A stretch of DNA of 64,000 bases from Octopus sinensis. Lineage: Eukaryota. Made by a program: the position numbers and the translations under genes. Numbering within the stretch: the first letter of the stretch is position 1; each line of letters begins with the position of its first letter. The stretch covers positions 205,344,001 to 205,408,000 of the forward strand of contig NC_042997.1 of assembly GCF_006345805.1 (NCBI RefSeq), in the 5' to 3' direction. Shown one piece after another: positions 18,216 to 45,929 of the stretch. The notes under the pieces were generated by a model that saw only the letters and a program-made list of their open reading frames with translations, was not told the origin of the DNA and did no database searches.

Positions 18216-18247
<32 letters not shown>

Positions 18248-20413: not shown

Positions 20414-20468
20414 CTGATTATGCAGCAGAACCATTTGCCAGAATTTCTTGGAAATATTCATTAAATTT
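20414..20468 (-). CDS. macrodomain gene, post-macro linker exon 2 (KFNEYFQEILANGSAA*), in-frame TAA at 20418-20420
   Basis: tttgtttctaacAG acceptor, GTAAAT donor, 55 nt (phase 0 to 1); paralogous to exon 33758-33803. Confidence 0.75.
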
Positions 20469-26500: not shown

Positions 26501-27840
26501 CACTTTACTAGTCTTGTTTTTATAAAATTTACAATCTCAAAACCTTGATTCAAAACTTTGCTTAATTTGTCTCCTAATGTTTTTGCCATCAATGCTTCTC
26601 TATGAAGAAAGCAGTAAGTTATTGGGCTTCCTGGAGGCAAAACAGCTGAGTTCCTTTTGAGTGTTGGGCCTGATAGAGGTAATGACCAAGACTTTTGGTA
26701 TTATGTCGTGCTTGAGAAAAAGACCCATCAAGCCAAGGAAAATTGCAGCTGTGGCAGATACCAGTTTCATGCAAATTTGCACCCATACCAATGGGACATA
26801 AACCCAACCCAGTGCCATGCAAACAGCACCCACGCTAGTGGCACATAAAAACCCCATTATACTCTCAGAGTGGTTGGCATTAGGAAGGGTATCAAGTCGT
26901 AAAAAAGCATGCCAAATCAGACTGAAACCTGGTACAGCCTTCCAGCATGCCAGCCCAGTCAAACTATCCAACCCAATCCAGCATGGACAACAGATGTTAA
27001 ACAATGATGAAGTTGATATTCCACCCATCTCTGCTATCGATGCTCAAACACAGAATAGGGTTTGCTGACCCCTGCTACTTTGTTGAACTCTTGACCAGAT
27101 CAGATTTTATATTTTGGAGATTTCCACACTCCGACAGGAGGTGAGTTCCACTCAGTTACATTGATATTCTTGGAAAAGACACAGAACAAGAAGCAGAGTA
27201 AGGGGGGGTGCAGACAGAGATTATTGGTGTGGAATTGTGAAATGTGTCTTGATTGTGGCAGCTTGGAAGAAGAGGAAGAAAAGAGTGAAAGGAAGACAGA
27301 CATCACTGACTTCAAATCTGCTGAATCAGAACCGACTCGGGGTTAAATAAGAACAATAAGATCAGCAGCCAAACTGCAAAGAAGACCTTCAGTGTTAGCA
27401 ATTCTTGTAGAGTTGGTTTTGGATACAACAACAACAACAACAAACAAAACATTCTTAGCTTCAAATGTTACAATGGAATATTTCAGAAGCAAGAATTTGG
27501 TGATGGGAAATGGTATAATGAAAGGATAAAGCACAACAAAATATAATGAACAGCATTAAAGGTAGCATGAAGAAAGGTACCCAGGACATGCTGTGAAGTG
27601 GTTGGCATTAGGAATGGCATCCAGCCATAGAAACCATGCCAAAGCAGACACTGGGGTTCAATAAACCCTTGTGGCTCATTGGAGCCAGTCAAAATGTTGC
27701 ACCCATGAAAGTATGGAACAAGGGCAGTAAATTATTATGAGGGTCATTTCTATTTTCTTTTCTTTATTGCGGAATATTGGTTTTTGGTAAATTCCAAGAA
27801 TATCAACATCAAACAACAAACAACAAATACATCAACCAAC

Positions 27841-28068
27841 CTTTGCTATTTCTTTGTCTGGAGGAAAAACAACGAAGTTTACAACTTTGATCTGGTTTGA
27901 ATTTAGATTTGAGTAGCTTTTCACTGCTTCATACATAGTTCTAGGTAGTTTTTCAATGGGGTACTTCAGTACTCCAGATCCTATTATAGGAAATGCAAGG
28001 CTCTTTGCTCCCATTCTCTCAGCATTTTCCAGACAAGTGGTTATTATTTGAGTCAAGTTTGCCAGAAT
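27841..28068 (-). CDS. PARP14/PARP15-like macrodomain, module A exon 3
   Basis: AG/GT bounded, 228 nt, phase 0-0: ILANLTQIITTCLENAERMGAKSLAFPIIGSGVLKYP...VNFVVFPPDKEIAK (macro SxAFPxIGxG motif). Confidence 0.92.
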
Positions 28069-28667
28069 CTAAAAAAAATAATTGTTTAGTAATTGATAAT
28101 GAACATTTTATTAAATTATTTTCTTATTACAGGAAGAAACCATTAAGTTGTAATAAATATATCCTCCTCTCACACCTACCACTTCTAAACACAACTGTCA
28201 TTCCTATCACTCTTTAGTCCTGCAAGGGACAAGGTAACCTCACTCATGTTGCTGCTACAATAAGTCAGACCCCCATCCACCGTGTAAAATGGTTGGTGAA
28301 TGAAGAGAGACAATGCAGACCCAAGAGGAGTCTTTAGTGTTGTTGAGGACATGACAACCTCTCTAGTGCTCGTGCCATGACAGAGAAAAACTCACCAATA
28401 CAGACAGTAAAACAGAGAAATATGTTTTAATATAGTCTTATTTATCAGTCACATAACTGTTGTTAGGCCATGAGGCTTTTTTCCTTCTATTTATATATAA
28501 AAGTGTCCTGTTCATCGATATCTTCTGCTTCCTTCCAACGATAACTTGGAAGAACAAATATTAAACAGGATGCTGACATTTGCTTTATGATTCTCACACA
28601 ACATGCATAAGGTTCTCTTCAAACATTAACTGTTTCAATAAATCAATATCATATGATTGATACTTAC

Positions 28668-28895
28668 TAAATCAGAGGAATTTTCATCCCAGGGAGGTAA
28701 TGCCAGATGAAATACATTCTTACATTTGAGGTTATATCCTTTAGTGATGGCAATTTCTGATGTAGAAATACCTTGAGGATATTTCTGGTTACATTCATCT
28801 TGTATCTGTGGACCAGCAGAATTGAGAATAAATTTGGAGATAGAACCATCATTAAGCTGGAGGATTTTATTGGTGCTGTTAATGATGACATCAAC
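28668..28895 (-). CDS. macrodomain module A exon 2
   Basis: 228 nt, phase 0-0: VDVIINSTNKILQLNDGSISKFILNSAGPQIQDEC...ITKGYNLKCKNVFHLALPPWDENSSDL; GTAAGT donor. Confidence 0.92.
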
Positions 28896-29176
28896 CTACA
28901 AAAGTAATTAATGGTAAACAACTAAGGAACATTCCGCGGAGAGAAGAGAGATACATTGTTGCAGTTGATATTGTTGTTAAGAAAGGCTCTACAGAATGGC
29001 TGTAGTAAGTTTGAGGTTGTTAAAGTTCGCAAAAGATATACTCAGGATATCAGATGTGAAGGAAATAAAATGTTTGAGTTTGATTGAGAAAATGTTTTAA
29101 TTAACTTTAATGATTCCTCATTTGGAAATGAAATAACAATTAAATACAAATATGTTAAGTGAATCTATTTACTCAC

Positions 29177-29313
29177 AGATGCATTAGAAATTGAATCAGT
29201 CATTAGGTTTATTTCAATGCCAGCATTTTCTCCGGATGCCACATTAGTTCTGGGTGTCATAGGGGCTGCTTTCTGTTGTGGACCAGGAAGGGATGGGTTT
29301 GGTGATGCAGTGT
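29177..29313 (-). CDS. macrodomain module A exon 1 (linker plus first strand)
   Basis: 137 nt, phase 1-0: TASPNPSLPGPQQK...GIEINLMTDSISNAS; tttttttcAG acceptor and GTGAGT donor. Confidence 0.85.
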
Positions 29314-30349
29314 CTGAAAAAAATAAACAAATATCAAGGTGTATGTTGTATGTTATGTATACATATCATCATGATGATAATTGTTTAATGCCTGCTTTCC
29401 ATGCGGGCATGGGTTGGATGGTTTCACTGAGGACTGGCAAGCCAGGAGGCTGTACCAGGTTCCAATCTGATCTGGCAAGGTTTTTACAGCTGGATGCCCT
29501 TCCTAACACCAACCACTCCGTGAGTGTTGTGGGCGCATTTTGTGTGCCACTGGCATGTGGGTCAATCAGGCAGCACTGGCACTGACCATGCTAGAATAGT
29601 ACTTTTTATGTGTCACTGGCACGTGAGCCAGTCAGTTGGTAGTAGCATCGACCACACTCGAATGGTGCTTTTTATACATGTATCTATATTCTTTTATTTG
29701 TTTCAGTCATTTCACTGAAGCCATGCTAGAACACCACATCTAGTTGAACAAATCAGCTACAGGACTTACTCTTTGTAAGACTAGTACTGATCTCTCGTGG
29801 TATTGATCTCTCTTGCCGAGCAACTTTGATTTCCAACCTAGCACACATCTAAAACCTGTTTTTACAGTGCAAATTATGATTACTTTATTATTTCATTATG
29901 TATGTCAGCATAGTCTTCCAAGCTGTATGTTTCGAGAAAGAAACTTAAGATCCCTATGCTCAATCCAGCTCTCCCTTTTTCTTACACTCATTTATTATTG
30001 CCATTCAGCCATTCATTCATTTAATTTTGTCATAGTTTGGCTGACTGAAAACTGTTGCTTATAGCTCTAGTTAAGAATGCAAATGTCCAATTCTATCTCA
30101 TTATTATTATTATTATTATTATTATTCCACACCAGCAGCCAGAGTGTTTGCCGTTTCACAGAAGTCTTTATTCTCAGACCTCTATCGGATGTCTTTCCCC
30201 TGAACATTTCCAAAGGCTTAATGCTCTCCCGTCCCTACTTAGGGTTTATCTCCTATGTAATGTAGTGATTATGTAGCACATAAAATGATGGTGTAGTGTA
30301 TGAAGGGTGAAGGCTAATGTATGTTTATGAGTTCAACCAAATGCGAGCT

Positions 30350-31480
30350 TTCTTTTCAGGTACATGATACTGCTGTCCCCCATCCCAGGGTTTCTCAGGC
30401 CCACACCTCCCACATCCATAGGGTTGGCACACTGACAGATAGGTCTGGTGAGATTCTTGAAATGCTCGAGCAGAGACATGTAGATTTGTGCTGCATCCAA
30501 GAAGTAAGGTGGAGAGGAGGTTCTGCTAGGTTCCTCACAGGCAAAGAACATAGGTGTAAGATTTTCTGGGTAGGGAACACACATGGGGTCGGGGGCGTGG
30601 GTATACTTCTTGCAGAGAAATGGGTTGATAAGGTAATCGAGGTAGTCAGAGTCTGTGATAGAATACTAAGGATTAGATTAGTGCTGCAACATGGATTAGC
30701 AACCATTATCTCAGCTTATGCTCCTCAGCCAGGGCTACCAGATGAACAGAAAGACTAATTTTATGACACCCTTCCTCTTGCAGATTACCTTGTGGATGAA
30801 CAACAGGGACCTTCTCTTTGTGGCTGGCAACTTCAATGGACAAGTTGGACAACATGCAAGGGGCTTCCATGGCATACACTGATGCTACGGTTTTGGTTCC
30901 TGTAATGAGGAGGGAACCAGGCTGCTGGAGTTCTACGATGCAAATGATCCTCTGGTTTGTAATGATAACTTCAGGAAACCTGCCAGTCATCTATTCACCT
31001 ACTGATCTGGTGGACACACTAGTCAAAATGATTACACCCTCACCAGGAAATGGGAAAGATGGCTACCTATAAATGCCAAAATGTTCCCATGTCAAGAATG
31101 TACCTCACAACATAGATTAGTAGTTAGTGACTTCAGGATCAGGGCTAAATGGATGCCCAGGAGATGACCAGCATGGACAAGAAGGGTCTGGAAGCTTAAG
31201 GATCTTGTGAATGGATAGAGATTTAGAGACATATTAGTCAAAGCTTTTGACAAAATAGAGGGGGACATAGCATCACATGATGTTGAAGACAACTGGAGGT
31301 TCCAACAGGACAACATGTTGAGGACCACGAAACAGATCTGTGGATGGTGCAAAGTCCCCTCTCGACCCAAGGTAATTTAGTGGTGGAACAATGTAGTTAA
31401 AAGGGCCATTAGGGAAAAGAAACAGGCTTGGAAGGACTGGAAGAATGGTGGTAGCAGTGAATTGTTGCAGGAAGAATGCT
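30350..31480 (+). mobile_element. RTE LINE 5' portion (APE endonuclease), degraded
   Basis: VDLCCIQEVRWRG...GVGILL...IISAYAPQ...GNFNG motifs. Confidence 0.85.
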
Positions 31481-31582
31481 AGAGAAGCACATGATCTATT
31501 ATATACAGATAATTCAGTTCTAAATAAAGTAAAATCTAGAAAGAAAAATTTAACAATAGCATGGATAGATAATAAGAAAGCC

Positions 31583-32613
31583 AGATCTGTTCAATCTGGC
31601 TCACAGATTTTTTATTAATTTTTTTTTAACTAAACAGTTTGAAATTTTGTATACTGGTGAAATTTCTCATGCAGAATATGGTTTACTTTAAACATTTTTG
31701 ACAAAATTTCGTATTTTAGAAGTTATTTCATGTTAAAGTTGTTGCATTTGGGTAACTCTAACCAATCAAAAACATGTATTCAGTTGAAGAAAGCTACTGC
31801 TGTTTGCGATAGTAATTGAAGAGGAACAACTTCCAGGTAATTTCTACTAAATGTCGCCACTCTGCACTATTTTATTTATTGTTTACTGTCCATGTTGCAT
31901 ATTATACACATTTTTTTTTGTTTTAGGTTCTTGCATCGGAGTAACACTGATCAACACGATGAGATATATTATTATTGTTATGATTTTATCTTACTATAAT
32001 CATCAACAAACACTTTTCATCAATATGAAAGTCTCTATTAGATTAAAAATAACATTATAAAAACATGACGGTAAAACAAAATAAATATGCTGTGTTTTCT
32101 TCCAGGCACCAATGTACTGAAGCCGTAGTCTTTCACATTGTTCACCAACCAATCTTTCCTTGAAAAATTCAGCAGAATCAGTCAATCTCCAGTAATTGTA
32201 GTGGTAGAGACAAGTTCACTCACTGGTTGCTAGTTGATAGTGTAGAAGTGGCTGTCTGCCAGTAGGGAGGGAAAGAGTAAGGAATGCATGGTGCTAACTA
32301 GGAAGGAAGAAAGGATAAAGGTGACATTGTCTTCGCTCGACATACGAATAGAACAGAGTGGTGACATTTAGTAGAGATGACCCGTAAGTTGTTCCTCTTC
32401 AATTACTATCACAAACAGCAGTAGCTTTCGTCAACTGAATACACATCGTTGATTGGTTAAAATTACCCAAATACAACAACTTTAACCTGAAATAACTTCT
32501 AAAATATGAAATTTTGTCAAAAATGTTTAAAGTAAACTGTTCTGACTGAGAGATTCTACCAGTATACAAAGTTTCAAAAATTAAAAAATTTGTACGCCAA
32601 ACTGAACAGATGC
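31583..32613. mobile_element. non-autonomous long-TIR DNA element inserted in an R4 RT fragment
   Basis: Inverted arms at about 31583-31867 and 32357-32613; 8-bp duplication AGAAAGCC (31575-31582 and 32614-32621); the flanks rejoin as RKKNLTIAWIDNKKA|YDMILHTWIM. Confidence 0.8.
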
Positions 32614-33124
32614 AGAAAGCCTATGATATGATTCTACACACATGGATAATGAATGTTTGAGAATATTCAGTATTGCAGACAACATAGAGAGACACCTACC
32701 TCTTACCCAGGGACACAGGGTAAGGCCATCTGGTTGCTTTCTGCCATTGCCATCATAATTTAACATCCTCCTTCCATGCTTGCATGAGTTGGATGGTTTT
32801 ACAGAAGCCTGCACCAGACTTCTGTAATTGTCTTGGTTGGATTCTTACAGCTGGATGCCCTTCCTAACACCAACCACTTAGCAGTGCTTTTTACATGGCA
32901 CAATCACAGGTGAGGTCAGTTTTGGCAAGATTTTTACAGCTGGATGCCCTTCCAAATAGCAACCACTTCACAGCGTAGACAGGGTACTTTTTAAGTGGCA
33001 CCAGCAGGGTAACCAAGTAACCTTGCAAGGCAAAGGAGAGGCAGCACTAGAGGAGGGGAGCTTGTGCCAGATGATGAATGGTTGGAGAGAGACAGAAACA
33101 GATGTCTTGCTGTAGAGGAGATAC

Positions 33125-33345
33125 ATGGTTACAGAGAGAGAGAGAGAGAGAGGGGAATTGAAGAAAAGGAGAGAAAGTGAGAGAAAGAGAAGAAGGGGTG
33201 AGAGAGGAGAAGGGGAGAGAGAGAAGAAAGGGAGAGAGAGAGAAGAAAGGGAGAGAGAGAGAAGAAGGGGAGAGAGAGAGAAGAGGGGGAGAGAGAAGAA
33301 AGGGAGAGTGAGAGAAGAAAGGGGAGAGGGAGTGAGAGATAACAT
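33125..33345. repeat. GA-rich polypurine tract
   Basis: Directly visible. Confidence 0.9.
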
Positions 33346-33757
33346 GAAAGAAGGTAGTAACAGATGTTCTGGTGTAAATGAGATGAATGGTTACCTAGTT
33401 GGAAGGAAGAGCAAGGGAAGGAGAGAGGGAGAGAGGGAGAGAGAGGGTGTATGGTTAAGAATGAGAGCAGAAACAGGCATGCTGCTGAAGAGGAGATACA
33501 CGGTTACCCAATGTGAGAGAGAAGACAGAAGGAGGGAGATACGTGGTTACCCTACCAGAGGGAAAGCAAAGGGAGAGAGGGAGAGTGGGAGTGGAAGAGA
33601 GGTGCTAGGGTATCCTGGCAAAGGATAGGGACCATGGCCTAGATGGGATGGTAAAGTAAGAAAGATAGAAGTAAATGGTGGAAGGCCAGGTGCCAGGGCA
33701 CACCCCACAGGTATAGAGGTCATAATAATATTCAATATTAATGAACAAATTATTTAC

Positions 33758-33803
33758 CTTTTGAATGAAATTCTTCAGTTTTTAAGAGATATTCACGAAA
33801 TTT
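33758..33803 (-). CDS. macrodomain gene, linker exon 1 (KFREYLLKTEEFHSK)
   Basis: ttttttgttttaacAG acceptor, GTAAAT donor, 46 nt, phase 0 to 1; this is the phase needed to join 42501 to 29313 in frame. Confidence 0.85.
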
Positions 33804-34539
33804 CTGTTAAAACAAAAAAACAATCAGAATTATTTTTATGCTTAATTTTTTCATTTTTGCAAATAGAAGAGATTTAATATAACAAAAGCATGACAAAATA
33901 TTTGAAATATTTAATGGTTCATTTCTAATCAGTAACAAACAAGAGGGGAAAATTACTTTGTCATTCAGATCAAAGTTATTCTGTGTATGGCCTGCCTGTC
34001 TTCTGAGAGACATGAAACCTATGTCAATATGGTATTATAGTGAATGCAGCAGAAAAAACTCCCACACTTTACATGGCCACTGATGTGATGTTAGTGAAGT
34101 TAAACATGTGGCAATGGTGTCTTCATGTAGCTGAAGTTGTATTGTTTCTTCTCTCCACTCACCATTCTGATTAAAACTGCTGAGTCTTGTGTTTTCTGTT
34201 GAAATGTCTATCAAGAATGTTGAAGTTGAGGTTATTTTTCTTGCATCTCATATGTCCAAAAACATTTCAGTAACAAAACCAGAGTACAAGTGTTGTTGGG
34301 AATTAGTAATAATGGTATACCCTTCCCATGTGACCAATGGAATAACCTAGTCACTGTAAGTAAAGAGAAGTACGTGAAGTACCAGAGTACACGGTAGGTG
34401 GTCAGAGATAGTTGTGTCTTAATTAGTTTTACTAAATATACTGTATCCCAAAATAGGCATTAAAACAATTCAACATTTTAAGAATTATAACAGGATAAAC
34501 CAATTCATGTGGGGTTAATAGAAACTTGAAGAGGAGTTA

Positions 34540-37300
34540 ACAAACTCACAAAAGTTTTAGCTGTGCGAATTTTAGAGTTGGCACCCACAATGTAGACACA
34601 CTGAAAAGTAGGTCTAACTAGATTGTAGAGATACTTGAAAGGAGGCATGTTGAGATATGTTGCATTCAAGGGGTAAGGTGGAAAGGAGCTTCAGTCAGAT
34701 TCCTCACAGGCAAGACTCAAGGGTATAAAATCTTCTGGGAAGGTAACAGTGATGGGGCAAGTGAGGTGGGCATACTTCTAGATAATAAATGGGTGAATAA
34801 GGTCATAGAGGTAGTTAGAATATGTGATAGAATACTTAAGTTCAGGCTGGTCTTACAGAATTGTATAGCTACAATTATATTTGCCTACATCCCACAAGTG
34901 GGCCTACCAAATGTACAGATGGACCACTTTTGTGATATTCTTCTGCAGCCTACTTCAAAGATGAGTGACAAAGATCTCGACTTCATGGCTGGGGGATTCA
35001 AATGGGCATGCCAGATGGCTGCCCAATAATTTCCATGGTGTACATGGGAACCATAGAATTGGTTCCTGAAATGAAAATGGAAAAAGGCTACTGAAGTTCT
35101 GTGATGCAAATAACCAACTGATTTGCAACACCAACTTCAGGAAGCCAATCAGCTACCTGATAACCTATCAGTCAGGTGTTTCTGCTAACCAGATTGATTA
35201 CATCCTGACCAGACAGTGGGATGTATGGTTGCTCTTAAATGCAAAGACTTTCCCTGGTGAAGAATGTACCCCCAGCATAGACTAATCAATAATGTCTTTA
35301 GACTCCAGGCCAGAAGGATGCCAAGAAGCAGACCAATCTGGATAAGAAAAATTTGGAAGCTTAAGGACCCTTCATATGGTCAGAGATTTAGGGACATCCA
35401 AACTGAGAAATCTGATGAGAGGGAGGAGGAGGAGCTACAGACTTGTGACATACAGAGCAACTAGGAATTCCTGTGAGACAGCTTGCTGAGTGCCACAGAC
35501 CAAATCTGCAGCTGGTGTGAAGTCCCTTCCAGACTTAGGGTAACATAGTGGTGGAACGATGCAGTAGACAGGGCCATTAAAGCAAAGAAACAGGCCTGGA
35601 AGACCTGGAGGAGTGGGGATAGCAGGAAACTGTTTAAATTGCCTGAAGGGAAGCTAGGAAGCTAGGAGACAGGTATATCTAGCCAAGGGAGAAGCAGAAA
35701 AGAAGTTTGCCTCTGTTCAGTGATGTGAGGACCAAAGAACTGATGTGTTTCAGATTGTAAGACAGTGAGTGAGATAAAATTGTGATGTTATAGGAGAGAA
35801 ATGTATGTGCATCGATGATGGTGCACTTGAGTTTAATGATTCTGCAAAGAAAGAGGCATGGAAATGCTATTATGAAAGACTGCTGAATGTGGAGAATGAA
35901 TGGGAGGAGGGGAGTCTATCCAAATTGACAGTACCTTGATGGATAAAGCAATTAAGGGTTTGATGACAGGGAAAGCCCCCACCCCATCAGGAATCACTGC
36001 TGAGATGCTTAAAATATCTGGTGGTGTGGGTTATAGTTGAGTTACACGTATTGTAAATCAGGTAGTTCATGAAGGAATCATACTCAATGACTGGTGTAGC
36101 AGCACCATAGTCAACAGCTACAAGGGTAAAGGTGATGATTTAGATAGAAATAATTACAGAGGTATCAAATAGTTGGATCAGGGGATGAGTCATGGAAAGG
36201 GCCGTAGCCCAACTACTTAGGGAGGGAATTAGTTTAGATGAAGTGCAGTTTGGTTTTGTGCCAGGCAGAAGCACCACTGATGCTATATTTCTGGTAAGAC
36301 AGTTGCAGGAGAAATATATAGCCAAAGATAAACCTCTGTACCTGGCTTTTTGTTGACATGGAAAAGATTTTGACAGAATTCTCTGATCCGTTATCTGGTG
36401 GGCAATGCAGAAACTAGGGATAGATGAATGGTTGGTAAGAGTTGTACAAGCCCTGTACAGGGATGCTATCAGTAAGGTGAGTGTTGGTAACGAGTACAGT
36501 GAATAATTCAGGGTGCTCAACCCCGCTTGATCATCATAGTCCTCCAGGTATTAACGGAGGAATTCTAGACAGGCTTCCCCTGGGAGCTCTTCTATGCTCT
36601 CATAGTAGAATCACTACAAGAACTAGAGAAGAAGGTTCAGGTATGGAAGCAAGGTCTAGAATTGAAGAGCTTTAGAGTTGATCTAGCAAAAACCAAAGTC
36701 CTAGTAAGTAGGAAGGCAAACAAATCACAAATCCCTTCAGGTAGATCGCCTTATTTGATCTTTAAAAAAGGCATAGGCAGAAATTCCATAAGATGGACCT
36801 GGTATAAGCTTTGGAAATATAAAAGATGCAGCAATGCCAGAGGAAGGTTAACAGGGAAAAATAGGTTTTGTGTGTGGAAGATGTACAGGTACAATAAGCG
36901 CTGAAAGTGTGCAGAATTTAGGCTCCATCAACTAGGGGTATACCAGAGGTAGTAGATAGCTTCTGTTACCTGGGTGACCAAGTTAGTAGCGAAGATGGAT
37001 ACTCCAAGAGCATAGCTGTGAGAATAAGATTACGCTGGGCAAAGTTCAGAGAGTTCCTACCTCTACTGACAACAAAGGGCATCTCCCTCAGAGTGAAAGG
37101 CAGATTGCATAATGCTTGTGTGTGAACAATTACACTACATGGCATTGAAACATGGGCTGTGATAGCCGAAGACATGTGTAGAGTAGAAAGAAATGAAGCC
37201 AGTATGCTTCCATGCCAGTGTCAGTGTGCATGTCCAACAGAGTAGGACAAATAAAGAAGCACTGTAGAATGCAGATGACAAAATGGTACAGCAAAGGAGA
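34540..37300 (+). mobile_element. near full-length degraded RTE LINE (APE, RT, C-terminus)
   Basis: APE motifs at 34650-35300; GKAPTPSGI, NYRGIK and QFGFVPGRSTTDAIF in the RT; C-terminus homologous to 16600-16900. Confidence 0.85.
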
Positions 37301-37369
37301 AAGAATAAATAGTATGCCATCAGAAGAAATTGGCAATATAACAATGAGGAAATTCATGAAGGTGAAAAT

Positions 37370-38600
37370 CAGTTAAAATGCAGTTGGACATGGTTAGTGA
37401 TATCACCATTATAAATGAAAAACCGTGGAAATATGTTGGTAAGCTGAAATTAATTAAATCAAAAAAGGCAGTACATGGTGTAACAGGAAAAAGATTATAT
37501 TTTTTCTGTGAATTTGTATGTAATGTAACATTTCAAGGTCAAATGAAAAAGGCAAAATTTGTGTTAAAAAGTTCAGTTAATTTATTCGGCACAGGGTGGA
37601 TGGAATTATTCAAAGTATGGAATACACCCATAAGTGCTTTGTGTGGAAATATCGTTGGATCAGTCAAAGGTTTGAATGTGGCTGAGGGACTGAAACAAAA
37701 AACTGCAGTAAAACAGAGTGGAACACTGGTATGTAAGCCAAAATGAAACAAAAAATTGCCGACAATAAAATCTAAACATTGGTCTATGGTGAAGACTGCA
37801 CGCCGATTTTGCTGGTCCTTTAAATGGTTCTTACTACTTAGTGGTAGTTGATAGCTTCTCAAGATGGCCTGAAACTATAAAATGTAAAAAAGACCAACCC
37901 CCTCAACTGTGATATATTTTTTACACCCAGACAAGACAATGTCTAACAATGGAATGCATTTTGTGTCTAGTGGATTATAAAAATTTTGTGAAACATTCAC
38001 GGTAGAACATATAAACTACAGTGCAGAACGCTTTGTCATCACCTTCAAGAGAACCCAAAGAAAGTTGAATAAGGAAGTTACAAATGAAGTAGCTCTACAA
38101 CAATTTTTAAGAGTGTACCGTGTGACACCAAATCCAAATACACCAGCCAGTAGCTCACCAGTGGAGCTGATGTTTGCAAGGAAAGTTAAGTCAGTCTTTG
38201 ATAAATTGCTCCCTGGCAAGAAAACAAAACGTGCCAGGGAAGACATAGCAAGACTCTTTAAAGTTGGTGAAAAGGTGTATATGAGGGCATACAAGATTGG
38301 AAAGCAGAGTTGGGAAGATGGCGTAATTACCAAATGAATAGGTAAAAATAATGTATTGGGTAAAAAGTAGAAAAGGCATACAAAAGAGACACAGGAACCT
38401 TCTGAAAAAGAGATTCGTGGAAAGTGAACCAAAGAAGTTGGAGGAGTCAATGGAATGGTTGTATGATACGTTCCAAGTACCAACACCACAGCAGGTGATT
38501 GAACCTAAGCATACAAGTGAGAGGAAAAGAATACAAGTGCCAAAAATATTAAATTGTATGGAAAAAATTTTATGGACTCTGTGTCCATATGAGAGGTCCT
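37370..38600 (+). mobile_element. internally deleted Ty3/Gypsy pol remnant (protease plus integrase)
   Basis: MQLDMVSDITIINEK (aspartic-protease-like), DFAGPLNGSYYLVVVDSFSRWPE and FLRVYRVTPNPNTP...SPVELMF. Confidence 0.8.
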
Positions 38601-39084
38601 CTCAAGGTAAATAAGGCAGTATTTGGTGTTCTAACACAACATTCACATTTAGTTGGATATAAAGATTGCCTTTTGGTATTAATACTGCTTCTGTTGCTAT
38701 TACTTTTAATTGCCTTAATTTAAGTTGTCTCAATGTATGGTACCTTCGGAAAGTCTCTTTAACTACAGCCTTAGGCCAAACAAAGCTCTGTGAGTAGGTC
38801 TGGTAGGCAGAAAATGAAATAAGCCTCCCCAATACACAATCAACCTAGACAACTCACAGGCACCGTCTACCTTGGTTTCCTTCATTCAATCGTTTCAGAA
38901 AAACAGTAGAATGATTATTTCTCTCTCCATCATTTTTTCCATATTCTTCACCAGTTTCATGAACTAAAGTCCCTCTTTCAAGACATCACAAGATGGCAAT
39001 GTGCTTCTATGAAAGTAGACTCTATTCCAAAACTAATATGCATTTTCATTCTCAAATGTTTCTTCTATTTCAATATTGGTTTAC

Positions 39085-39900
39085 AAAGTGCTATCAAAAA
39101 CTTTCCGGACTAATCATGTTCAATAAAAAATAACTTTTTTGCCTATGTTTTAAAAATCATTTTCTTTGAAATAGTTACCTTGCACAGCAATAAACTGCAC
39201 AGCAGATCGAGGACCTTCAACAGTTTACTCTGAATCATGACAATGGTATTAAAATAGCAACCTTTGATTGCCTCTTCATTTGGGGAATAGATGGAAGTCA
39301 ACAGGTGGTAAATAGGGTAGGGAGGAGAGCTTGATGGGATGCAATGTAGTCATGAAGAATCCTTGTTTGGGCCCTTTATTAGCAGTGTCACCGTTCTTCG
39401 ACTCACAGAATTGGAAATTCTCCTATTCTTCAGCCAGTCATGGTAGATATCTGCTGAAAGACCACCAAATAAGTGTGGCATATAAAGTAAAGACCATAGA
39501 GCAGACCATCCAAATCAAGCAATTTGCACCTCCCCCACCTATGCAACCCATTATCACATCCCATATTTTTGCAGCTGTTATCAACATTTTGTAAGGCTAT
39601 GCCCCACTTACCAAGAGTTATGGTATGTCTGCAAGGTAAGCACTGAAATTCATCCTGCGTTCTGGACTGCCATTCATTCCAAACTGTTGGGTGAAGTGCT
39701 GTTGAAATGCCACACACCTCTGCTTGGGTTCGAATACCATGTACCCCATTTTGGTCCACCAAAAACCAAATTGTGGCTTTGTTGCTAGTATTGGAGCTCT
39801 GCCACTGAGGTCCATTGGATGATTTTCATTCTGACTTGTCTCAGTGCAAGCATTTTAGCTCTGACAATGCAACTTTTGTGTTTAGCATTGAAGAAGTGAC
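39085..39900 (-). mobile_element. degraded mariner-like element
   Basis: TIR-like ATCAAAAACTTTCCGGACT and a remnant LLHD...DFHLFPQMK-like stretch; heavily mutated. Confidence 0.45.
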
Positions 39901-40049
39901 CCAGGGGCCAATCTCACAGCCAGTATGTCAGTTATGATACATTTTCTAATTGCCTTTTCTAAGTTTCTAATTTCCCTTCTATTTTATTTCTTTCTAACAC
40001 TAATCTTTACTGGCAATTGATTTTACTCTAACTGGTCTTTTCAGTGCAA

Positions 40050-41420
40050 GCTACCATGTGTTGTCGATGATTGCCCCTGTCAATGCTTAACTAATTCTTT
40101 AATCCAGTCTCTGTAAGCCTGACATGCCAACAGTGACACATTCAGCTCCCAGTAGCCGAGTTCCTGCCTTCTTAAGCCTATCTAGGTCAACTGTAGAAAT
40201 CATACATACGTGGTCGATGTAGCCAATGATTTTTAAAAGTGGACAACTTACACTATCCTTATCTACTGACCTACAGAACATCCTGTCAAGATGCGATCTG
40301 AATGACCTGATGCGATTCATCCAAAATCCATACTGGCACTTTCAATAAATCCAGTCGGTACCTATCAGACAAATACAAACATGGAATGGACATGTTTAGA
40401 GGAGATTTTTGTTTTTTTGCTAAGAATAAAGTTCATGTTTTGGCAAATTCTGATGCTGTTGCTTTTGCTACTCCCTGGCATATTAAAGCCATAGACGTTT
40501 GTGAGTTCTCTGTTCTGTTTGTTGCTGTTGTTCTTGTTGTCAGTGTTGCTGTGATTGCTGTTGCAGTTGCTTTTATATCCATAGTAGTCACTTGCATCTG
40601 CTGTTGTGGTTGTGGTGGTAGTGGTGATGGTGTTGGCAGAAGTGAGGGTCTCCCTTCTCTCATTTGTTGTGGGCAGAAAACCTTTAGATGATTTGTGTCC
40701 CCACATAGGTGACACATCAGATTTCTACCTTCGAAGGGTATCTGGAGTTTGGTGTCATGTGGTAAATTTATGATGTCCAGAATTGTTTAAGTTTTGTAAT
40801 CTATTTGCACCCACAACTCTAAGTCTTGCCCAACTTTCCACACACGTACGATGTTTGTTTGACCCTCAATGTCCAGAAGGACAACTGCCACCAACCAGCA
40901 GATGTTTATTTCTGGTGGTATGTCTGCAGTTTTTATTTTCACCACTCTCTAACCCAAGTATATGGGTAACAGAAGCAGGTTTCATTTTTTAGGTTCAAAG
41001 TGAAGTGCTTCCTTGCCTTCTCCTGTCAGAAAAATTTCACCTCTACGGTGCCATATCTCTTCCCTCTTGCAACACAAGTTTGTTTGTGTCCTAAACTGGA
41101 TGTAGACACTTTTCCATTTGATGTTGCATCATTCATTCTTATCGATGACTTTTAACTCCTATTGTTTTATGGGCTTTTGTTTCTCTCAGTGTGTCCTGTA
41201 CGATGGCTTCGAGAGCGTTAAGGGTTACCATTCTTCTATTACTTAACACATCAATCCTTGCCTCATGAAGTGGAAGTAAGTAAAAGAAAATGTTCAGATA
41301 ATCAACTCTTGTTTGTCCAACCTGGCATACATCTAATCCTCGTTTTGTACTGCTAATTATAATTACTACAAGCAGAGGTACTTGGGGTTGCAAAGGGTTT
41401 GAATGCTTCGTCATTCTAAG
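40050..41420 (-). mobile_element. degraded LINE ORF1 (CCHC knuckle), possibly with start of APE
   Basis: IPFEGRNLMCHLCGDTNHLKVFC (Cx2Cx4Hx4C); broken frames upstream. Confidence 0.55.
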
Positions 41421-41954
41421 AACACTTATTTTCTAGTCTAACAACTTGGGCTGCCAAAGCTTTTTTGAAAAATGTATAGAATTCCATACCAAAATGTACC
41501 AAAATTCACAAAAATGTACAAAATATTTTTGAAATATGTCACAACTGCAAAGACAGAGAAAAATACTGGTTTTTCTTTGGAAATTTGAAACATATGGGTA
41601 TATAATGACTTGAAATTGATGAAAATACATATAAAAAAGAAAGACTATCGAATGGCATGCTGTTCTTCATTCTCTGCAGCTCACGTGGCTGCAGTTGATG
41701 TAGCATCCCTATTACAAAGAATAATGTGCTGTGACTGACTCAGGTTTGTGTGTAATGAAGCTGTTAATGCAGCATTTCTGATCAGGCAACTGCTACTCTG
41801 CCCCTCGCTTCCATGGCTCTCGCATTGGCTGTGTAAGCAGCATTTTGTGAATGTCTTAGTGCAGTCCCGTGTGAGGATTCATTTGCTCTCCTTCTCTTTA
41901 ATGTCTCTGCTCTGACCAGTTTTGTGACCAATACGAGCTCTTTTCTAAGGTGGC

Positions 41955-42190
41955 ATTCATCATCATCATCATCATCATCGTTTAGCATCCGCTTTCCATG
42001 CTAGCATGGGTTGGACGGTTCAACTGGGGTCTGGGAAACCAGAAGGCTGCACCAGGCCCAGTCTGATCTGGCAATGTTTCTACAGCTGGATGCCCTTCCT
42101 AACGCCAACCACTCTGTGAGTGTAGTGGGTGCTTTTTACGTGCCAGGCGAGGCTGGCAACGGCCACGATCGAATGGTGCTTTTAACGTGC
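41955..42190 (-). mobile_element. RTE 3' tail with (GAT)n
   Basis: Reverse complement of 17720-17895. Similar tails at about 26720-27010, 27550-27720, 29370-29660, 32750-33010 and 45080-45270. Confidence 0.85.
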
Positions 42191-42500
42191 CAACATATAA
42201 GTGAGAATTTGTCAGAAAGCCTCATCACATCTTCCCCTCTCATTCGGAACTTCTACTACAAAATACAATGATTAAGTATGGAATTAACTCCAACAGGGCC
42301 AATGTTTCATCTGTAAACAAACACAATGTGACAAATCCACTTATAAGTTGGCAATTACTAGAAATTTACAATTGTTTAAAGTGGCCAAAGACTTTTGCAC
42401 AGTACTATATTTTTGTTTCTATTTCCTTCCTTTGTTGCAGAATATTTTTTTCGATGAATTCCAAAAATATCAACATAAAACAACAAATACATCAACCAAC

Positions 42501-42728
42501 CTTTACTATTTCTGTGTCTTCTTCAGGTAAAACCACAAAGTAAACATCTTTGATCTGGCTTGATTTTTGATCCAAGTAGTTTTTCACTGCTTCATACATT
42601 GTTCTGGGTAGTTTTTCAATGGGGTATTTCATTTCAGCCCCTAATATAGGAAATGCCAGGCTTTTTGCACCCATTCTCTCAGCTTCTTCCAGACAAATGG
42701 TCATTATTTGAGTCAAGTTTGCCAGAAT
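42501..42728 (-). CDS. macrodomain module B exon 3
   Basis: 228 nt open, AG/GT: ILANLTQIMTICLEEAERMGAKSLAFPILGAEMKYP...VYFVVLPEEDTEIVK. Confidence 0.92.
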
Positions 42729-43201
42729 CTAATAAAATATAATTGTTTAGTAATTGTTAATGAACATTTTATTAAATTATTTTCTTATTACAGGAAGAAA
42801 CCATTAAGTTGTAATAAATATATCCTCCTCTCACTCCTACCACTTCTAAACACATCTGTCATTCCTATCACTCTTTAGTCCTGCAAGGGACAAGGCAACC
42901 TCACTCATGATGCTGCTACAATAAAACAGACCCCATCCACCGTGTAAAATGGTTGGTGAATGAAGAGAGACAATGCAGACCCAAGAGGAGTCTTTAGTGT
43001 TGTTGAGGACATGACAACCTCTCTAGTGCTCGTGCCATGACAGAGAAAAACTCACCAATACAGACAGTAAAACACAGAAATATGTTTTAATATAGTCTTA
43101 TTTATCAGTCATATAACTGATACAGATCTATATTTAAGAGATGAGGAATTATGTACATTATTTACATTTGACAGATATTTGTCCTCATCTTATTTGTTGT
43201 T

Positions 43202-43247
43202 AACACAACGTTTCAGCTGATATACCCTCCAGCTTTCATCAGGTGTC
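43202..43247 (-). ncRNA. minimal type-I hammerhead ribozyme motif (inverted copy)
   Basis: gacac-CUGAUGA-a-agcug(10 nt)cagcu-GAAA-cg-UU-guguu. Confidence 0.7.
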
Positions 43248-43306
43248 TTGGGGAAATTTCGAAGCTGGGTTCTCATTCCTAAGGTATTTTTCAATGTTAT
43301 TATTAG

Positions 43307-43368
<62 letters not shown>

Positions 43369-43584
43369 TCACTGTCTCGAATTGAACTCAAAATCTAGGG
43401 ATTAGTAGCCCACACTTTAACCACTATGCCGTATGCCTGTAGGCATACGGCATGGTGATAGAGAGTGCGGGCTACTAACCCCTTTATTCCGAGTTTGATT
43501 CCAGGTAGTGACCTGAATAGTAATAATAATAATAACATCGAAAAATACCTTAGGAATGAGAACCCAGGTTTGAAATTTCCCCAA

Positions 43585-43630
43585 GACACCTGATGAAGGC
43601 TGGAGGGTATATCAGCTGAAACGTTGTGTT
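43585..43630 (+). ncRNA. minimal type-I hammerhead ribozyme motif (dimer type)
   Basis: gacac-CUGAUGA-a-ggcug(10 nt)cagcu-GAAA-cg-UU-guguu; palindromic ACGU in place of helix III. Confidence 0.7.
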
Positions 43631-43734
43631 AACAACAAATAAGATGAGGACAAATATCCGTCAAATGTAATAATATAAATAATGAACATGCATAAGGTTC
43701 TTCTCAATTATTAACTGTTTCAATAAATCAATAT

Positions 43735-43949
43735 CCTTTTTTACTTTAGGCACAAGGCCTGAAATTTTGTAGGAGGGGTCCAGTTGATTAGATTTACCCC
43801 AATACACAACTGGTACTTAATTTATTGACCCAAAAGGATGAAAGGCAGAGTCGACATTGGTGGAATTTGAACTCAGAATGTAAAGACAGATGAAATATTG
43901 CTAAGCATTTCGCCCAGCATCCTAACATATCTGCCAGCTCACCGCCTTC
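43735..43949 (-). mobile_element. third-family SINE with 14-bp target duplication
   Basis: CAATAAATCAATAT at 43721-43734 and 43950-43963; the element is absent from the paralogous intron near 28640. Confidence 0.85.
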
Positions 43950-43981
43950 CAATAAATCAATATAATATGATTGATACTTAC

Positions 43982-44209
43982 TGAATCAGAGGAATTTTTA
44001 TCCCAGGAACGTAATGCCAGATGAAATACATTCTTACATTTGAGGCAATATCCTTTAGTGATGGCAATTTCAGACGTAGAAATACCTCGAGGATATTTCT
44101 GGTTACATTCATCTTGTATCTCTAGACAAGCAGCATTGAGAATAGATTTGGAGACAGCACCACTGTCAAGCTGGAGTTCTTCATTGCTGCTGTTAACGAT
44201 GACATCAAC
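43982..44209 (-). CDS. macrodomain module B exon 2
   Basis: 228 nt open: VDVIVNSSNEELQLDSGAVSKSILNAACLEIQDEC...ITKGYCLKCKNVFHLALRSWDKNSSDS; GTAAGT donor. Confidence 0.92.
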
Positions 44210-44503
44210 CTACAAAAGTAATTAATAATAAACAGCTAAGGAACATTCCATGGAGAGAAGAGAGATACATTGTTGCAGTTGATATTGTTGTTAAGAAAGG
44301 CTCTACAGAATGGCTGTAGTAAGTCTGAGGTTGTTAAAGTTAGCAAAAGATATATTCAAGATATCAGATGTGAAGGAAATAAAATGTTTGAGTTAGATTG
44401 AGAAAACGTTTTAATTAAATGTTTTAATTAACTGTAATGATTCCTCATTTGAAAATGAAATAACAATTAAATATAAATAAGTTACATGAATCTATTTACT
44501 CAC

Positions 44504-44640
44504 AGATGCATTAGAAATTGAATCAATCATTAGGTTTATTTTAATGCCAGCATTTTCTCCAGATGCCACATTAGTTCTGTGTACCACAGAAGAGGGTTCC
44601 TGTTGTGAACCAGGAAGGGATGCTTTCGATGATGCAGTGT
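44504..44640 (-). CDS. macrodomain module B exon 1
   Basis: 137 nt, phase 1-0: TASSKASLPGSQQEP...GIKINLMIDSISNAS; the upstream exon was not located. Confidence 0.85.
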
Positions 44641-45929
44641 CTGAAAAAAATAGACAAATATCAGTGTGTGTGTGTGTGTGTGTGTGTGAGTGTATCTTTT
44701 ACTTGTTTCAGTCATTCGAATGTGGCCATGCTGGGGCACCACCTTGAAGAATTTTTAGTCAAATGAATCAACCCAATACATTAATATTTTAAAGCCAGAT
44801 ACTTATTCTATCAGTCTCCTTTGATAAACCACTAAGTTATGGAAAGTGTGCTCTGGAACCCTATTACCACCATCTTTCTCCCCTCCAGATACTGTCATGC
44901 ACCCTTGCATAAATATGAGGAGGCCATGAGTCTCCCCTATATCCAGACAACTATGTTTGACCCTCTAGCAAACTTTAGAATTTCTACCCAAGGCATCAAG
45001 GCATTTCCCCACCCCAATTCCATTAGGGGTTTTTATCCTTTTCCATTCTTTGCTTTGTTTTGCAAGATACTTGGTGACCTCACCAGTGCTGGTGCCATGA
45101 GAAAAGCACACTGTAAAATGGTTGGCAATATGAAGGGCAACCAGCCAGCCAGCCATAGAAACCATGCCAAAGCTGAGCGTGGAGCCTAAAACAGATCTGG
45201 TGGTCATCAGATCATGTCAAACTGTGTAACCCATGCCAGAATAAATGATTGACATTAAATGAGGATGAGGATAATGATACAGTCCGTGAGTCTGTAAGTC
45301 AGAAAAACACGCACTCGTACATTTTTCAACAGTGTGGGTATATTACTTACTTGTACTTGTGGCAACATTCTCTCTGGGTGGGTTGTGTCGGCTTCTTCTA
45401 CTAATGGAAGAAGTTTCGTGGGGATATGTGGATTTCACAAGCGGTCACCAACAATCCCACATGTGGAGACATCTTGTTTGCCACAGATTGTACGCAGACA
45501 CAGAGACAGAACGACCGAGGAGCCGCCAGTTACTGAAGCATACACTCCAAGGATTTTCACCAGAGCCCTGTCTGCCGGGTTGTGTCCCTAATACCACTCG
45601 GTGTCAGATCAATCCGCCTTGGGTGGCCCTACCAGGAACCGAAGTTCCCGACGGCATAGCTCTGACACTACCCGTTGCCAGTGTCCCCACCATGGAATGG
45701 GCATATTAAGCATAAACTATTCAGTATTATAAATCTATTTCAACCATTCTTACAAAGTTGTTTTGCACCTGATATTGGGTAATTAGGTGATTATCTAAGA
45801 GTGGTTGGTATGGAAAAGTTGCAGTAGCTTTCTGTCAGCAAGTTCCACATCTGGTTTGTGGAAGCTGTGAAAATAATGCATTCCATTTTAATGAATGATC
45901 TGTGCATGTGGGGAGTGTCAGTGCAATAA

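What the first reader, a model, noticed from the sequence alone, without database searches (positions are those of the whole stretch)
27841..44640. Recent internal macrodomain duplication in a PARP14/15-like gene, with exons more diverged than the intron
Modules B (42501-44640) and A (27841-29313) have identical exon sizes (137, 228, 228) and alignable introns, and the 46-nt exon at 33758 joins them in frame. By-eye count for exon 2: 26 nucleotide differences in 228 (about 11%), 19 codons change amino acid and only 2 are purely silent. The adjacent intron differs at about 17 of about 280 sites (about 6%) plus one indel. Changes cluster in loops that line the ADP-ribose pocket of macrodomains (NKILQLNDGSIS versus NEELQLDSGAVS; IGSGVLKYP versus LGAEMKYP), so module B has lost the GxG phosphate loop. 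Established: mammalian PARP9/14/15 macrodomains are antiviral and rapidly evolving. Inference: positive selection or a ligand switch in an invertebrate immune macrodomain array.
Basis: partly seen in the sequence, partly recalled or inferred. Interest (0 to 1): 0.75.

Follow-up and report, generated by a model that had tools for sequence, protein, structure and literature searches.

The report
Octopus macrodomain repeats with homogenised introns
Two macrodomain-coding modules in an annotated, expressed Octopus sinensis PARP14-like gene do differ more in their exons than in their introns, but the cause is most likely that gene conversion has kept the introns alike across a large gene family, not that a recent duplicate was driven apart by positive selection.

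Summary
Modules A (27841-29313) and B (42501-44640), on the minus strand, have 137/228/228-nt exons with canonical splice sites. Exons differ by 12.9% and internal introns by 4.6% (p=1e-7). The 46-nt exon joins them in frame, matching XP_029635758.1, a protein detected in octopus skin mucus.

The interpretation mostly fails.
- dN/dS for A versus B is 0.85-1.09. Exon 2 alone is higher but not significant (p=0.28).
- Synonymous divergence (0.15-0.27) and the noncoding flank after exon 3 (about 20%) match the exons. The introns are the anomaly.
- The 1.6-kb cassette is family-wide: in 55/55 module pairs exons exceed introns, and A and B are not sister modules.
- True orthologues in O. vulgaris differ by 1% or less in exons and introns alike.
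- Introns evolve near neutrally between orthologues and do not align to Argonauta, so constraint is excluded.
- Recombination tests are significant.

Best reading: old modules whose introns are homogenised by gene conversion while exons stay distinct, as in primate L/M opsins. B's lost GxG loop is confirmed and is conserved in O. vulgaris, so a ligand change remains possible. The gene stops before any PARP domain.

The parts
57152..57186 (-). First coding exon seen in the window. It contains the in-frame ATG GCG GAG AAA G (MAEK) start shared with paralogues. The annotated N-terminal 'MC(R)' would need a further upstream exon, which was not found in the window.
   Evidence: tblastn of P0002; sequence read; no ATGTGCAG|GT in the window
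44504..44640 (-). Module B exon 1 (137 nt): Pro/Ser-rich linker plus the first strand of the macrodomain
   Evidence: AG/GT sites and frame; 100% match to P0002
44210..44503 (-). Module B intron 1 (294 nt). It has 16 mismatches to A's intron 1 plus a 13-nt insertion.
43982..44209 (-). Module B exon 2 (228 nt): loop 1 / helix 1 region (NEELQLDSGAVS)
42729..43981 (-). Module B intron 2 (1253 nt). The last 391 nt are 96.9% identical to A's intron 2. The middle holds inserted elements: a SINE-like repeat and a MITE-like inverted repeat with arms 43162-43316 and 43516-43670. These are shared with O. vulgaris B copies.
42501..42728 (-). Module B exon 3 (228 nt): carries the altered phosphate loop FPILGAE-MKYP (GxG lost, one residue deleted)
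33758..33803 (-). 46-nt linker exon (KFREYLLKTEEFHSK plus 1 nt) joining B (ends in phase 0) to A (starts with 2 nt)
   Evidence: identical to XP_029635758.1
29177..29313 (-). Module A exon 1 (137 nt)
28896..29176 (-). Module A intron 1 (281 nt). This is the most uniform part of the cassette across the family (mean pairwise 3.8%).
28668..28895 (-). Module A exon 2 (228 nt): NKILQLNDGSIS loop-1 region
28069..28667 (-). Module A intron 2 (599 nt)
27841..28068 (-). Module A exon 3 (228 nt): intact FPIIGSGVLKYP loop
27747..27840 (-). Noncoding flank downstream of A exon 3. It is still homologous to B's flank (42416-42500) but about 20% diverged, like exons and unlike the internal introns.
20418..20468 (-). 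Terminal coding exon KFNEYFQEILANGSAA plus TAA (stop at 20418-20420). A GT donor follows 4 nt later (20412-20413). Paralogues read through this point into a PARP catalytic domain. The stop is identical in the O. vulgaris locus L001.

Best explanation
The window holds Octopus sinensis LOC115211026, a truncated macroPARP-family gene on the minus strand. It encodes two PARP14-macrodomain-2-type modules joined by disordered linkers, and it stops before any PARP catalytic domain. Each module is a 1.6-kb, three-exon cassette that recurs within and between at least a dozen PARP14-like genes in O. sinensis and O. vulgaris. Modules A and B are old relative to the species split: about 13-20% diverged at exons, at synonymous sites and in the edge flank. 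Their internal introns were made alike more recently by short-tract gene conversion among family cassettes (concerted evolution). The exons stayed distinct. Either conversions that erase module-specific residues are selected against, or the diverged exons themselves block conversion tracts. Exons still exchange short patches, which gives a mosaic. 'Exons more diverged than introns' therefore reflects homogenised introns, not accelerated exons. Shown: the divergence pattern, its family-wide extent, recombination signals, near-neutral intron evolution between orthologues, and stability of A and B since speciation. Inferred: that conversion is the homogenising process for the A-B pair specifically, and that selection keeps the exons apart.
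For: 1) dS exceeds intron K in all 28 intact pairs by 1.6- to 7-fold: mean dN 0.14, dS 0.20, Ki 0.054. For A-B, dS is 0.15-0.17. 2) The roughly 90-nt noncoding flank after exon 3 diverges 15.1% on average among modules. Exons diverge 12-13%, intron 1 3.8% and I2b 4.1%. For A-B, flank versus internal introns gives p=1e-5 and flank versus exons gives p=0.23. 3) Exons exceed introns in 55/55 module pairs. 4) True orthologues show no exon excess: As-A7 5/593 exon versus 7/712 intron; Bs-B7b 3/593 versus 4/725. A constant exon acceleration is disfavoured (Poisson p=5e-4, binomial p=0.02). 5) Module introns differ by 0.77% between orthologues against 0.9-1.4% for unique DNA. Neutrality is not rejected (p=0.14), but the 3.7-fold constraint needed to explain the pattern is rejected (p=0.004). 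Octopus introns do not align to Argonauta beyond about 20 nt at splice sites. 6) Recombination: PHI p=0.0015 for E2 and 0/2000 permutations for E3, and 45% of informative site pairs are incompatible. Sawyer-type tracts pass Bonferroni in 3/21 pairs, and most of the longest runs lie in intron 2. Exon and intron NJ trees disagree. O. vulgaris module Cv has an intron 2 that is 1.1% from Av next to an exon 3 that is 21% different. 7) In the duplicate locus L001, two-thirds of exon differences use alleles present elsewhere in the family. 8) The same signature has been attributed to intron conversion plus selection on exons in gibbon L/M opsins (PMC3213168).
Against: The A-B pair alone does not give a significant conversion tract (Sawyer-type p=0.086). 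The edge flank is short (about 90 nt), T-rich and harder to align, which could inflate its divergence. Only 13-16 cassettes out of a larger family were sampled, all taken from assemblies. pN/pS exceeds 1 locally in the linker and in the loop-1 stretch (windows up to 3.4), so some diversifying selection on exons may add to the contrast. I could not separate selection against exon conversion from a purely mechanical barrier caused by mismatched exons.
Confidence: 0.6

Rival explanations
1. One reading: A and B arose by a recent internal duplication dated by the introns. The exons then diverged faster through positive selection on the ADP-ribose pocket.
For: Exon 2 of A-B has 19 replacement and 2 silent codons, with omega 1.8-2.8. 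Family-wide pN/pS exceeds 1 in the loop-1 stretch. A-B differences in exon 2 cluster (p=0.019). Vertebrate macroPARP macrodomains are under positive selection (PMC4038475).
Against: Whole-module omega is 0.85-1.09. The exon 2 excess is not significant (p=0.28). Exon 3 has omega 0.48 with dS 0.27, far above intron K. The noncoding edge flank is as diverged as the exons. A and B are not sister modules. There is no exon excess between true orthologues. The 'new' loop variants (NEELQL, LDSGAVS) also occur in other paralogues.
Confidence: 0.08
2. Exon-import model: the cassettes, introns included, are young. The exons acquired extra divergence by receiving short conversion patches from older, more diverged family members whose introns are no longer homologous.
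For: Exon variants are largely shared patches: 42/68 variable sites in E2 and 49/103 in E3 are informative. Differences between L001 and the window are clustered, for example 11 in 30 nt (perm p=0.0000, 0 of 5000 permutations), and two-thirds of them use family alleles. More diverged paralogues exist at 47-63% identity.
Against: This model does not explain why the noncoding edge flank, which is not an exon, is also 15-20% diverged. Patches from 50-60% identical donors would look more divergent than what is seen. Nothing has been imported into A or B since the species split.
Confidence: 0.2
3. The internal introns are functionally constrained, for example by splicing control, an embedded RNA or an RNA-editing partner, and so evolve slowly in every copy.
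For: Intron 1 is remarkably uniform across the family, at 1-5.7%. Orthologue intron divergence (0.77%) is slightly below the neutral estimate of 0.9-1.4%.
Against: The 3.7-fold constraint required is rejected by the orthologue counts (p=0.004). Introns do not align to Argonauta. There is no Rfam family in 27000-45500. Low divergence applies to several separate intron stretches, not to one element.
Confidence: 0.05
4. Assembly or polishing artefact in a repetitive gene family, such as collapsed or chimeric copies.
For: L001 lies next to a 100-N gap. O. vulgaris has two B copies where O. sinensis has one, so collapse or haplotig problems exist in this region.
Against: Two independent assemblies agree on A and B at 99% or better, with the same A-B contrast in each. 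The spliced product equals an NCBI model and a protein found by mass spectrometry.
Confidence: 0.03

Closest known systems
Primate L/M opsin genes (intron homogenisation by gene conversion, exons kept apart by selection)
   Same: Paralogue divergence is significantly higher in exons than in introns. Synonymous sites are more diverged than introns. Exon and intron trees disagree. Conversion tracts lie mostly in introns (PMC3213168, compared).
   Different: The opsin case has two tandem whole genes and a few known tuning sites. Here a 1.6-kb three-exon cassette is repeated within and between many genes. The exons themselves are also mosaic. No functional sites are known.
Vertebrate macroPARPs PARP14/PARP15 (positive selection, birth and loss)
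   Same: Tandem macrodomains of the PARP14 macro2/3 type. Lineage-specific duplication, truncation and decay: frameshifted modules, and a macro-only gene. Paralogues with a two-macro-plus-PARP architecture resemble PARP15 (PMC4038475, PMC10221186).
   Different: PARP15 proper is mammal-specific (PMC10221186), so the octopus genes are an independent expansion. This gene lacks a PARP domain. dN/dS above 1 was not demonstrated here.
MHC class I/II genes (introns homogenised, peptide-binding exons hold old mosaic diversity)
   Same: This rests on my own knowledge, not on a tool result. Introns are more uniform than adjacent exons, dS is elevated in the variable exon, and there is patchwork sharing of motifs.
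   Different: MHC diversity is mostly allelic and under demonstrated balancing selection. Here the diversity is among paralogous modules, and selection is only suggested by local pN/pS above 1.
Snake-venom PLA2 and conotoxin 'accelerated evolution' genes (introns more conserved than exons)
   Same: This rests on my own knowledge. Exon divergence exceeds intron divergence, with dN roughly equal to dS.
   Different: Those cases are usually read as exon acceleration. Here the diverged noncoding edge flank and the quiet orthologues argue for intron homogenisation.

Membership tests
Macro domain (Pfam PF01661) | Significant match to the Macro profile above the curated cut-off | tested here: met
   A scores 74.4 bits (profile 1-113) and B 54.0 bits (profile 1-106) against a cut-off of 22. 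P0002 has two matched stretches.
Macro domain (Pfam PF01661) | Macrodomain fold | tested here: met
   AlphaFold2 model of P0002: both modules have pLDDT mostly 75-96. Foldseek top hits are PARP14 macro1-2 (3vfq, E=7.5e-29) and macro2 (3q71, TM 0.85, rmsd 1.6 A).
PARP14 macrodomain-2-type ADP-ribose reader | Closest sequence and structure relative is PARP14 macro2 | tested here: met
   phmmer gives 3vfq domain 2, 3q71 and 5o2d at E=1e-24 to 1e-37. Foldseek agrees.
PARP14 macrodomain-2-type ADP-ribose reader | Intact phosphate-binding loop 2 (G-x-G, aligned to PARP14 m2 IGTGNLGFP) | tested here: inconclusive
   A has IGSGVLKYP, so the feature is met. B has LGAE-MKYP, with the second Gly changed to Glu and one residue deleted, so it is not met. 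Among 16 modules this form is found only in Bs, B7a and B7b. Binding itself was not assayed.
MacroPARP (PARP9/14/15-like) | Two or more tandem macrodomains | tested here: met
   B-linker-A in one ORF, identical to XP_029635758.1.
MacroPARP (PARP9/14/15-like) | PARP catalytic domain (PF00644) in the same protein | tested here: not met
   A TAA stop lies in the terminal exon before a conserved donor. tblastn with the PARP halves of P0004 and P0005 finds no PARP exon in the window or in L001. Paralogues P0004 and P0005 do carry PF00644.
Gene under pervasive positive selection | dN/dS significantly above 1 | tested here: not met
   A-B omega is 0.85-1.09. Family mean is 0.66-0.70. The exon 2 excess has p=0.28. 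Local windows above 1 are only suggestive. Site models were not run.
Paralogues with conversion-homogenised introns (opsin-like) | Exon and synonymous divergence significantly above intron divergence | tested here: met
   Exons 12.9% versus introns 4.6%, p=1e-7. dS/Ki is 1.6-7 in all pairs.
Paralogues with conversion-homogenised introns (opsin-like) | Introns not under constraint (neutral between orthologues) | tested here: met
   Module introns 0.77% versus 0.9-1.4% neutral. Strong constraint is rejected at p=0.004. No deep conservation.
Paralogues with conversion-homogenised introns (opsin-like) | Statistically supported conversion tracts located in introns | tested here: inconclusive
   At family level, 3/21 pairs pass Bonferroni and the longest runs are mostly in I2b-I2c. 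The A-B pair alone gives p=0.086.
Paralogues with conversion-homogenised introns (opsin-like) | Exon tree and intron tree incongruent | tested here: met
   NJ trees and nearest-neighbour lists differ between partitions. PHI is significant.

The most novel reading that the evidence does not exclude
The expanded octopus macro2-type cassette family may work as an MHC-like diversified repertoire. Conversion would shuffle loop-1, helix and loop-2 variants among dozens of modules while selection preserves pocket diversity. That would give a panel of ADP-ribose readers or decoys for conflicts with viral macrodomains or ADP-ribosylating factors. Module B, with GxG lost yet conserved intact in two species and duplicated in O. 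vulgaris, would then be a variant with a changed ligand rather than a decaying copy.
Probability: 0.2. Interest if true: 0.7.

Novelty: new member of a known kind. Interest (0 to 1): 0.35.

Why it matters
The case shows that comparing exon with intron divergence in one paralogue pair can mislead. In multigene families, introns can be younger than exons because of gene conversion. dN/dS, and dating from introns, then give wrong answers. On the biology, it documents a lineage-specific expansion of PARP14 macro2-type cassettes in Octopus, with birth, decay, truncation to macro-only proteins and mosaic exchange. I did not find this described in the papers searched, though that library is incomplete. 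One member, this gene, is a mucus-associated protein whose abundance changes with husbandry. If diversifying selection on the pocket loops were confirmed, it would extend the macroPARP host-pathogen conflict known from vertebrates to a mollusc.

Tried and rejected
1) I first took O. vulgaris locus L001 (OX597842.1) as the orthologue and read its patchy exon differences as post-speciation change. The cluster look-up then revealed P0029 and locus L007 on the homologous chromosome, which is collinear with the whole window. I corrected this: L001 is a second copy or a diverged haplotype, and the true orthologues are quiet.
2) RNA-editing or retro-conversion signature: coding-strand A/G differences (63) versus C/T (49) show no clear excess. 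Rejected.
3) CpG hypermutability of exons: 7/76 exon differences versus 5/33 intron differences are at CpG. Rejected.
4) A known RNA or tRNA inside the conserved introns: none found.
5) A PARP catalytic exon downstream: none in the window or in L001.
6) An upstream exon supplying the annotated 'ATG TGC AG': not found in the window.
7) Loci for P0005 (gene range too long) and P0004 (not on record) could not be fetched.
8) The ML dN/dS run for all pairs timed out, so NG86 and YN00 were used instead.


Full report
WHAT IS THERE. The window is a transposon-rich piece of an Octopus sinensis chromosome. [quoted passage not shown]

The gene runs on the minus strand:
- a first coding exon at 57152-57186, containing a MAEK start that paralogues share;
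- module B exons 44504-44640, 43982-44209 and 42501-42728;
- the 46-nt linker exon 33758-33803;
- module A exons 29177-29313, 28668-28895 and 27841-28068;
- a terminal exon 20418-20468 that reads KFNEYFQEILANGSAA-TAA, with a GT donor four bases after the stop.

Paralogues such as P0004 and P0005 read through the equivalent point into a PARP catalytic domain. Here the stop is present, it is identical in the O. vulgaris locus L001, and no PARP exon is detectable in the window or in L001. The product is therefore a macro-only protein. It is made: A0A6P7SCI3 was a high-confidence protein in O. vulgaris skin mucus, and it was more abundant in aquarium-kept animals (PMC11431876 supplements).

CHECK OF THE OBSERVATION.
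- Exon sizes are 137/228/228 with canonical AG/GT sites.
- Exon 2 has 26/228 differences, with 19 replacement and 2 silent-only codons.
- Intron 1 has 16/281 mismatches plus one 13-nt indel.
- The last 391 nt of intron 2 are 96.9% identical.
- Over all regions, exons differ at 76/590 sites (12.9%) and internal introns at 33/711 (4.6%), p=1.1e-7.
- The loop sequences are as quoted.

Module A keeps FPIIGSGVLKYP, which aligns to IGTGNLGFP of human PARP14 macrodomain 2. Module B has FPILGAE-MKYP.

THE PROTEIN. Both modules match Pfam Macro. A scores 74.4 bits. B scores 54.0 bits, and its match ends just before loop 2. The closest solved structures are human PARP14 macro2 (3q71, 5o2d) and macro1-2 (3vfq). 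An AlphaFold2 model folds both modules with pLDDT mostly 75-96, separated by disordered Pro/Ser linkers. It superposes on 3q71 at TM 0.85 and 1.6 A. Macro2 and macro3 of macroPARPs are ancestrally non-catalytic readers (PMC10221186).

WHY POSITIVE SELECTION ON A RECENT DUPLICATE IS NOT THE ANSWER. Five results argue against it.
1) A-B dN/dS is 0.85-1.09 by four methods. Exon 2 alone gives 1.8-2.8, but from 3.5 synonymous differences (one-sided p=0.28). Exon 3 gives 0.48.
2) Synonymous divergence is itself far above intron divergence. For A-B, dS is 0.15-0.17 overall and 0.27 in exon 3, next to an intron stretch that differs by about 3%. Selection on amino acids cannot raise dS.
3) The cassette is not special to this gene. 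Modules in other PARP14-like genes (loci L002, L003, L004, L006) align to A through both introns at 89-93.5%. In all 55 pairs of 11 modules, exons (mean 13.4%) exceed introns (mean 5.5%). The A-B intron 1 distance (5.7%) is the largest in the set. Among intact modules, mean dN is 0.14, dS 0.20 and intron K 0.054.
4) A and B are not sister modules. By introns, L3b, Cv and L6b (2.9-3.8%) are closer to A than B is (6.0%). By exons, L2a and L2b are closer.
5) The 'pocket' variants of B (NEELQL, LDSGAVS) also occur in other paralogues.

THE ORTHOLOGUE TEST, AND A CORRECTION. I first used O. vulgaris locus L001 as the orthologue. The cluster look-up then turned up P0029 (CAI9716701.1) on the homologous 225.7-Mb chromosome. 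Its locus L007 is collinear with the whole window at about 98%. In L007 the A module is 99.25% identical to the window's A.

Exon and intron differences between true orthologues are equal and small:
- As-A7: 5/593 exon versus 7/712 intron;
- Bs-B7b: 3/593 exon versus 4/725 intron.

If exons always evolved 2.4 times faster than introns, about 22 exon differences would be expected, and 8 are seen (Poisson p=5e-4; conditional binomial p=0.02). The same A-versus-B contrast (13% versus 4.6-4.8%) exists in O. vulgaris. B's LGAEMKYP loop is present in both O. vulgaris B copies. So the divergence, loop loss included, predates the species split and has been stable since.

WHICH SIDE IS ANOMALOUS? The noncoding flank just after exon 3 is still homologous among cassettes. 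It diverges 15.1% on average, and about 20% for A-B. That equals the exons (12-13%) and dS, while intron 1 averages 3.8% and the 3' half of intron 2 averages 4.1%. For A-B, flank versus internal introns gives p=1e-5, and flank versus exons gives p=0.23. The internal introns are therefore the unusual part.

They are not constrained:
- between true orthologues they differ by 0.77%, against 0.9-1.4% for unique DNA;
- neutrality is not rejected (p=0.14), while the 3.7-fold constraint needed is rejected (p=0.004);
- they do not align to Argonauta hians beyond about 20 nt at the splice sites;
- no Rfam family or tRNA lies in them.

EVIDENCE FOR CONVERSION AND MOSAICISM.
- PHI is significant for exon 2 (p=0.0015) and exon 3 (0/2000 permutations), and 45% of informative site pairs are incompatible.
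- A Sawyer-type run test gives 3 of 21 pairs past Bonferroni, with most of the longest runs in intron 2. The A-B pair alone reaches only p=0.086.
- Exon and intron trees disagree.
- The sharpest example is O. vulgaris module Cv. Its 610-nt intron 2 is 1.1% from Av, while the adjoining exon 3 differs by 21%.
- L001, a second copy of the whole locus about 2% diverged in unique flanks, differs from the window and L007 by 6-11% in exons and 2-3% in introns. The exon differences are clustered, and two-thirds of them use alleles found elsewhere in the family.
- Argonauta's own two modules are 97.5-98.6% identical including introns. Exon 3 has 8/222 differences against about 4/608 in the adjoining intron. 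That is a weaker, independent echo of the pattern.

MECHANISM. The modules are old. Conversion among the many cassettes keeps the 300-400-nt intron stretches alike. The edges of the homology block escape conversion. Exons stay apart for one of two reasons: homogenised exons are selected against, or their mismatches stop conversion tracts. I could not separate these two. This matches the explanation given for gibbon L/M opsins (PMC3213168).

Family-wide pN/pS exceeds 1 only in the linker and in the loop-1/helix-1 stretch at the start of exon 2, with windows up to 3.4. It is 0.3-0.8 across exon 3, including loop 2. That leaves room for some diversifying selection on loop 1 but does not demonstrate it. 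Three of 13 paralogous modules are frameshifted, so the family also decays.

VERDICT. The gene identity, the in-frame join and the GxG loss in B are confirmed. This is a new example of a known phenomenon in an annotated gene, within an octopus macroPARP expansion that I did not find described in the papers searched. Interest is moderate to low.

Noticed in passing
L007:25694-55620 (equivalent to window about 47387-32192): O. vulgaris carries a roughly 15-kb tandem duplication of the segment holding module B, its downstream intron and the linker exon. This gives B-linker-B-linker-A (P0029, 705 aa). The two B copies differ at 11 of about 1340 sites. O. sinensis has one copy, either through loss or through assembly collapse.
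   Followed up: partly
L001 (O. vulgaris OX597842.1, 31.76-31.83 Mb), whole locus: This is a second copy of the entire locus, collinear with L007 and 97.4-98.5% identical in unique DNA. It has three modules whose exons are mosaic (6-11% different). It starts next to a 100-N gap at 10899-10998. It could be an older segmental duplicate or a diverged haplotype placed on another chromosome record.
   Followed up: partly
window 20412-20420: The stop codon TAA sits two codons before a well-formed GT donor, at the point where paralogues continue into a PARP catalytic domain. The same bases occur in the O. vulgaris locus L001. The gene looks like a macroPARP that lost its writer domain yet is still expressed.
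   Followed up: yes
window 50231-52157 and 54517-56349 (+ strand): Helitron remnants, with Helitron_like_N, PIF1 helicase and Pif1 2B domain ORFs. They lie inside the long first intron of the macrodomain gene, on the opposite strand.
   Followed up: partly
window 48571-49521 (+), 61469-63693 (-), 18581-19267 (+), 16502-17194 (+): ORF fragments that look retrotransposon-derived. Pfam reverse-transcriptase matches: RVT_1 for 49012-49521, 61469-62089 and 62899-63693, and zf-RVT for 18581-19267; no Pfam match for 48571-48999 or 16502-17194.
   Followed up: partly
window 43120-43947: Insertions specific to B's intron 2: a MITE-like inverted repeat (arms 43162-43316 and 43516-43670, 95% complementary) around an (ATT)n tract and a palindrome, plus a SINE-like element (43753-43948) with copies near 59791-60442. 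All are shared with the O. vulgaris B copies, so they are old markers of the B lineage.
   Followed up: partly
window 29359-29549, 41955-42145, 17705-17897, 24347-24476, 26828-27017: A roughly 190-nt SINE-like repeat family. One copy lies immediately upstream of module A and another just downstream of module B, in the same orientation. This could be chance given its abundance, or it could have mediated unequal exchange.
   Followed up: no
L002:26864-27267, L004:27886-28285, L006:24460-24689: Three paralogous cassettes carry frameshifts or stops: exon 3 of L2b and L4b, and exon 2 of L6b. NCBI models P0006 and P0007 end in the shifted frames.
   Followed up: partly
L005:2501-8500 and 15696-18471 (Argonauta hians): The two macro modules of the Argonauta gene are 97.5-98.6% identical including introns. 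Exon 2 is identical, and exon 3 has 8 differences that change 6 residues. A PARP-domain gene fragment follows at 28078.
   Followed up: partly
window 8974-9578 and 11121-11723: A 605-nt direct repeat at 98.8% identity, with the two copies starting about 2.1 kb apart. It could be the LTR pair of a small retroelement.
   Followed up: no
window 57186 and upstream: The annotated N-terminus 'MCR' of XP_029635758.1 needs an upstream exon ending ATGTGCAG. No such exon with a GT donor is in the window. The MAEK ATG at 57162-57164 matches the start of paralogues and may be the real start.
   Followed up: partly
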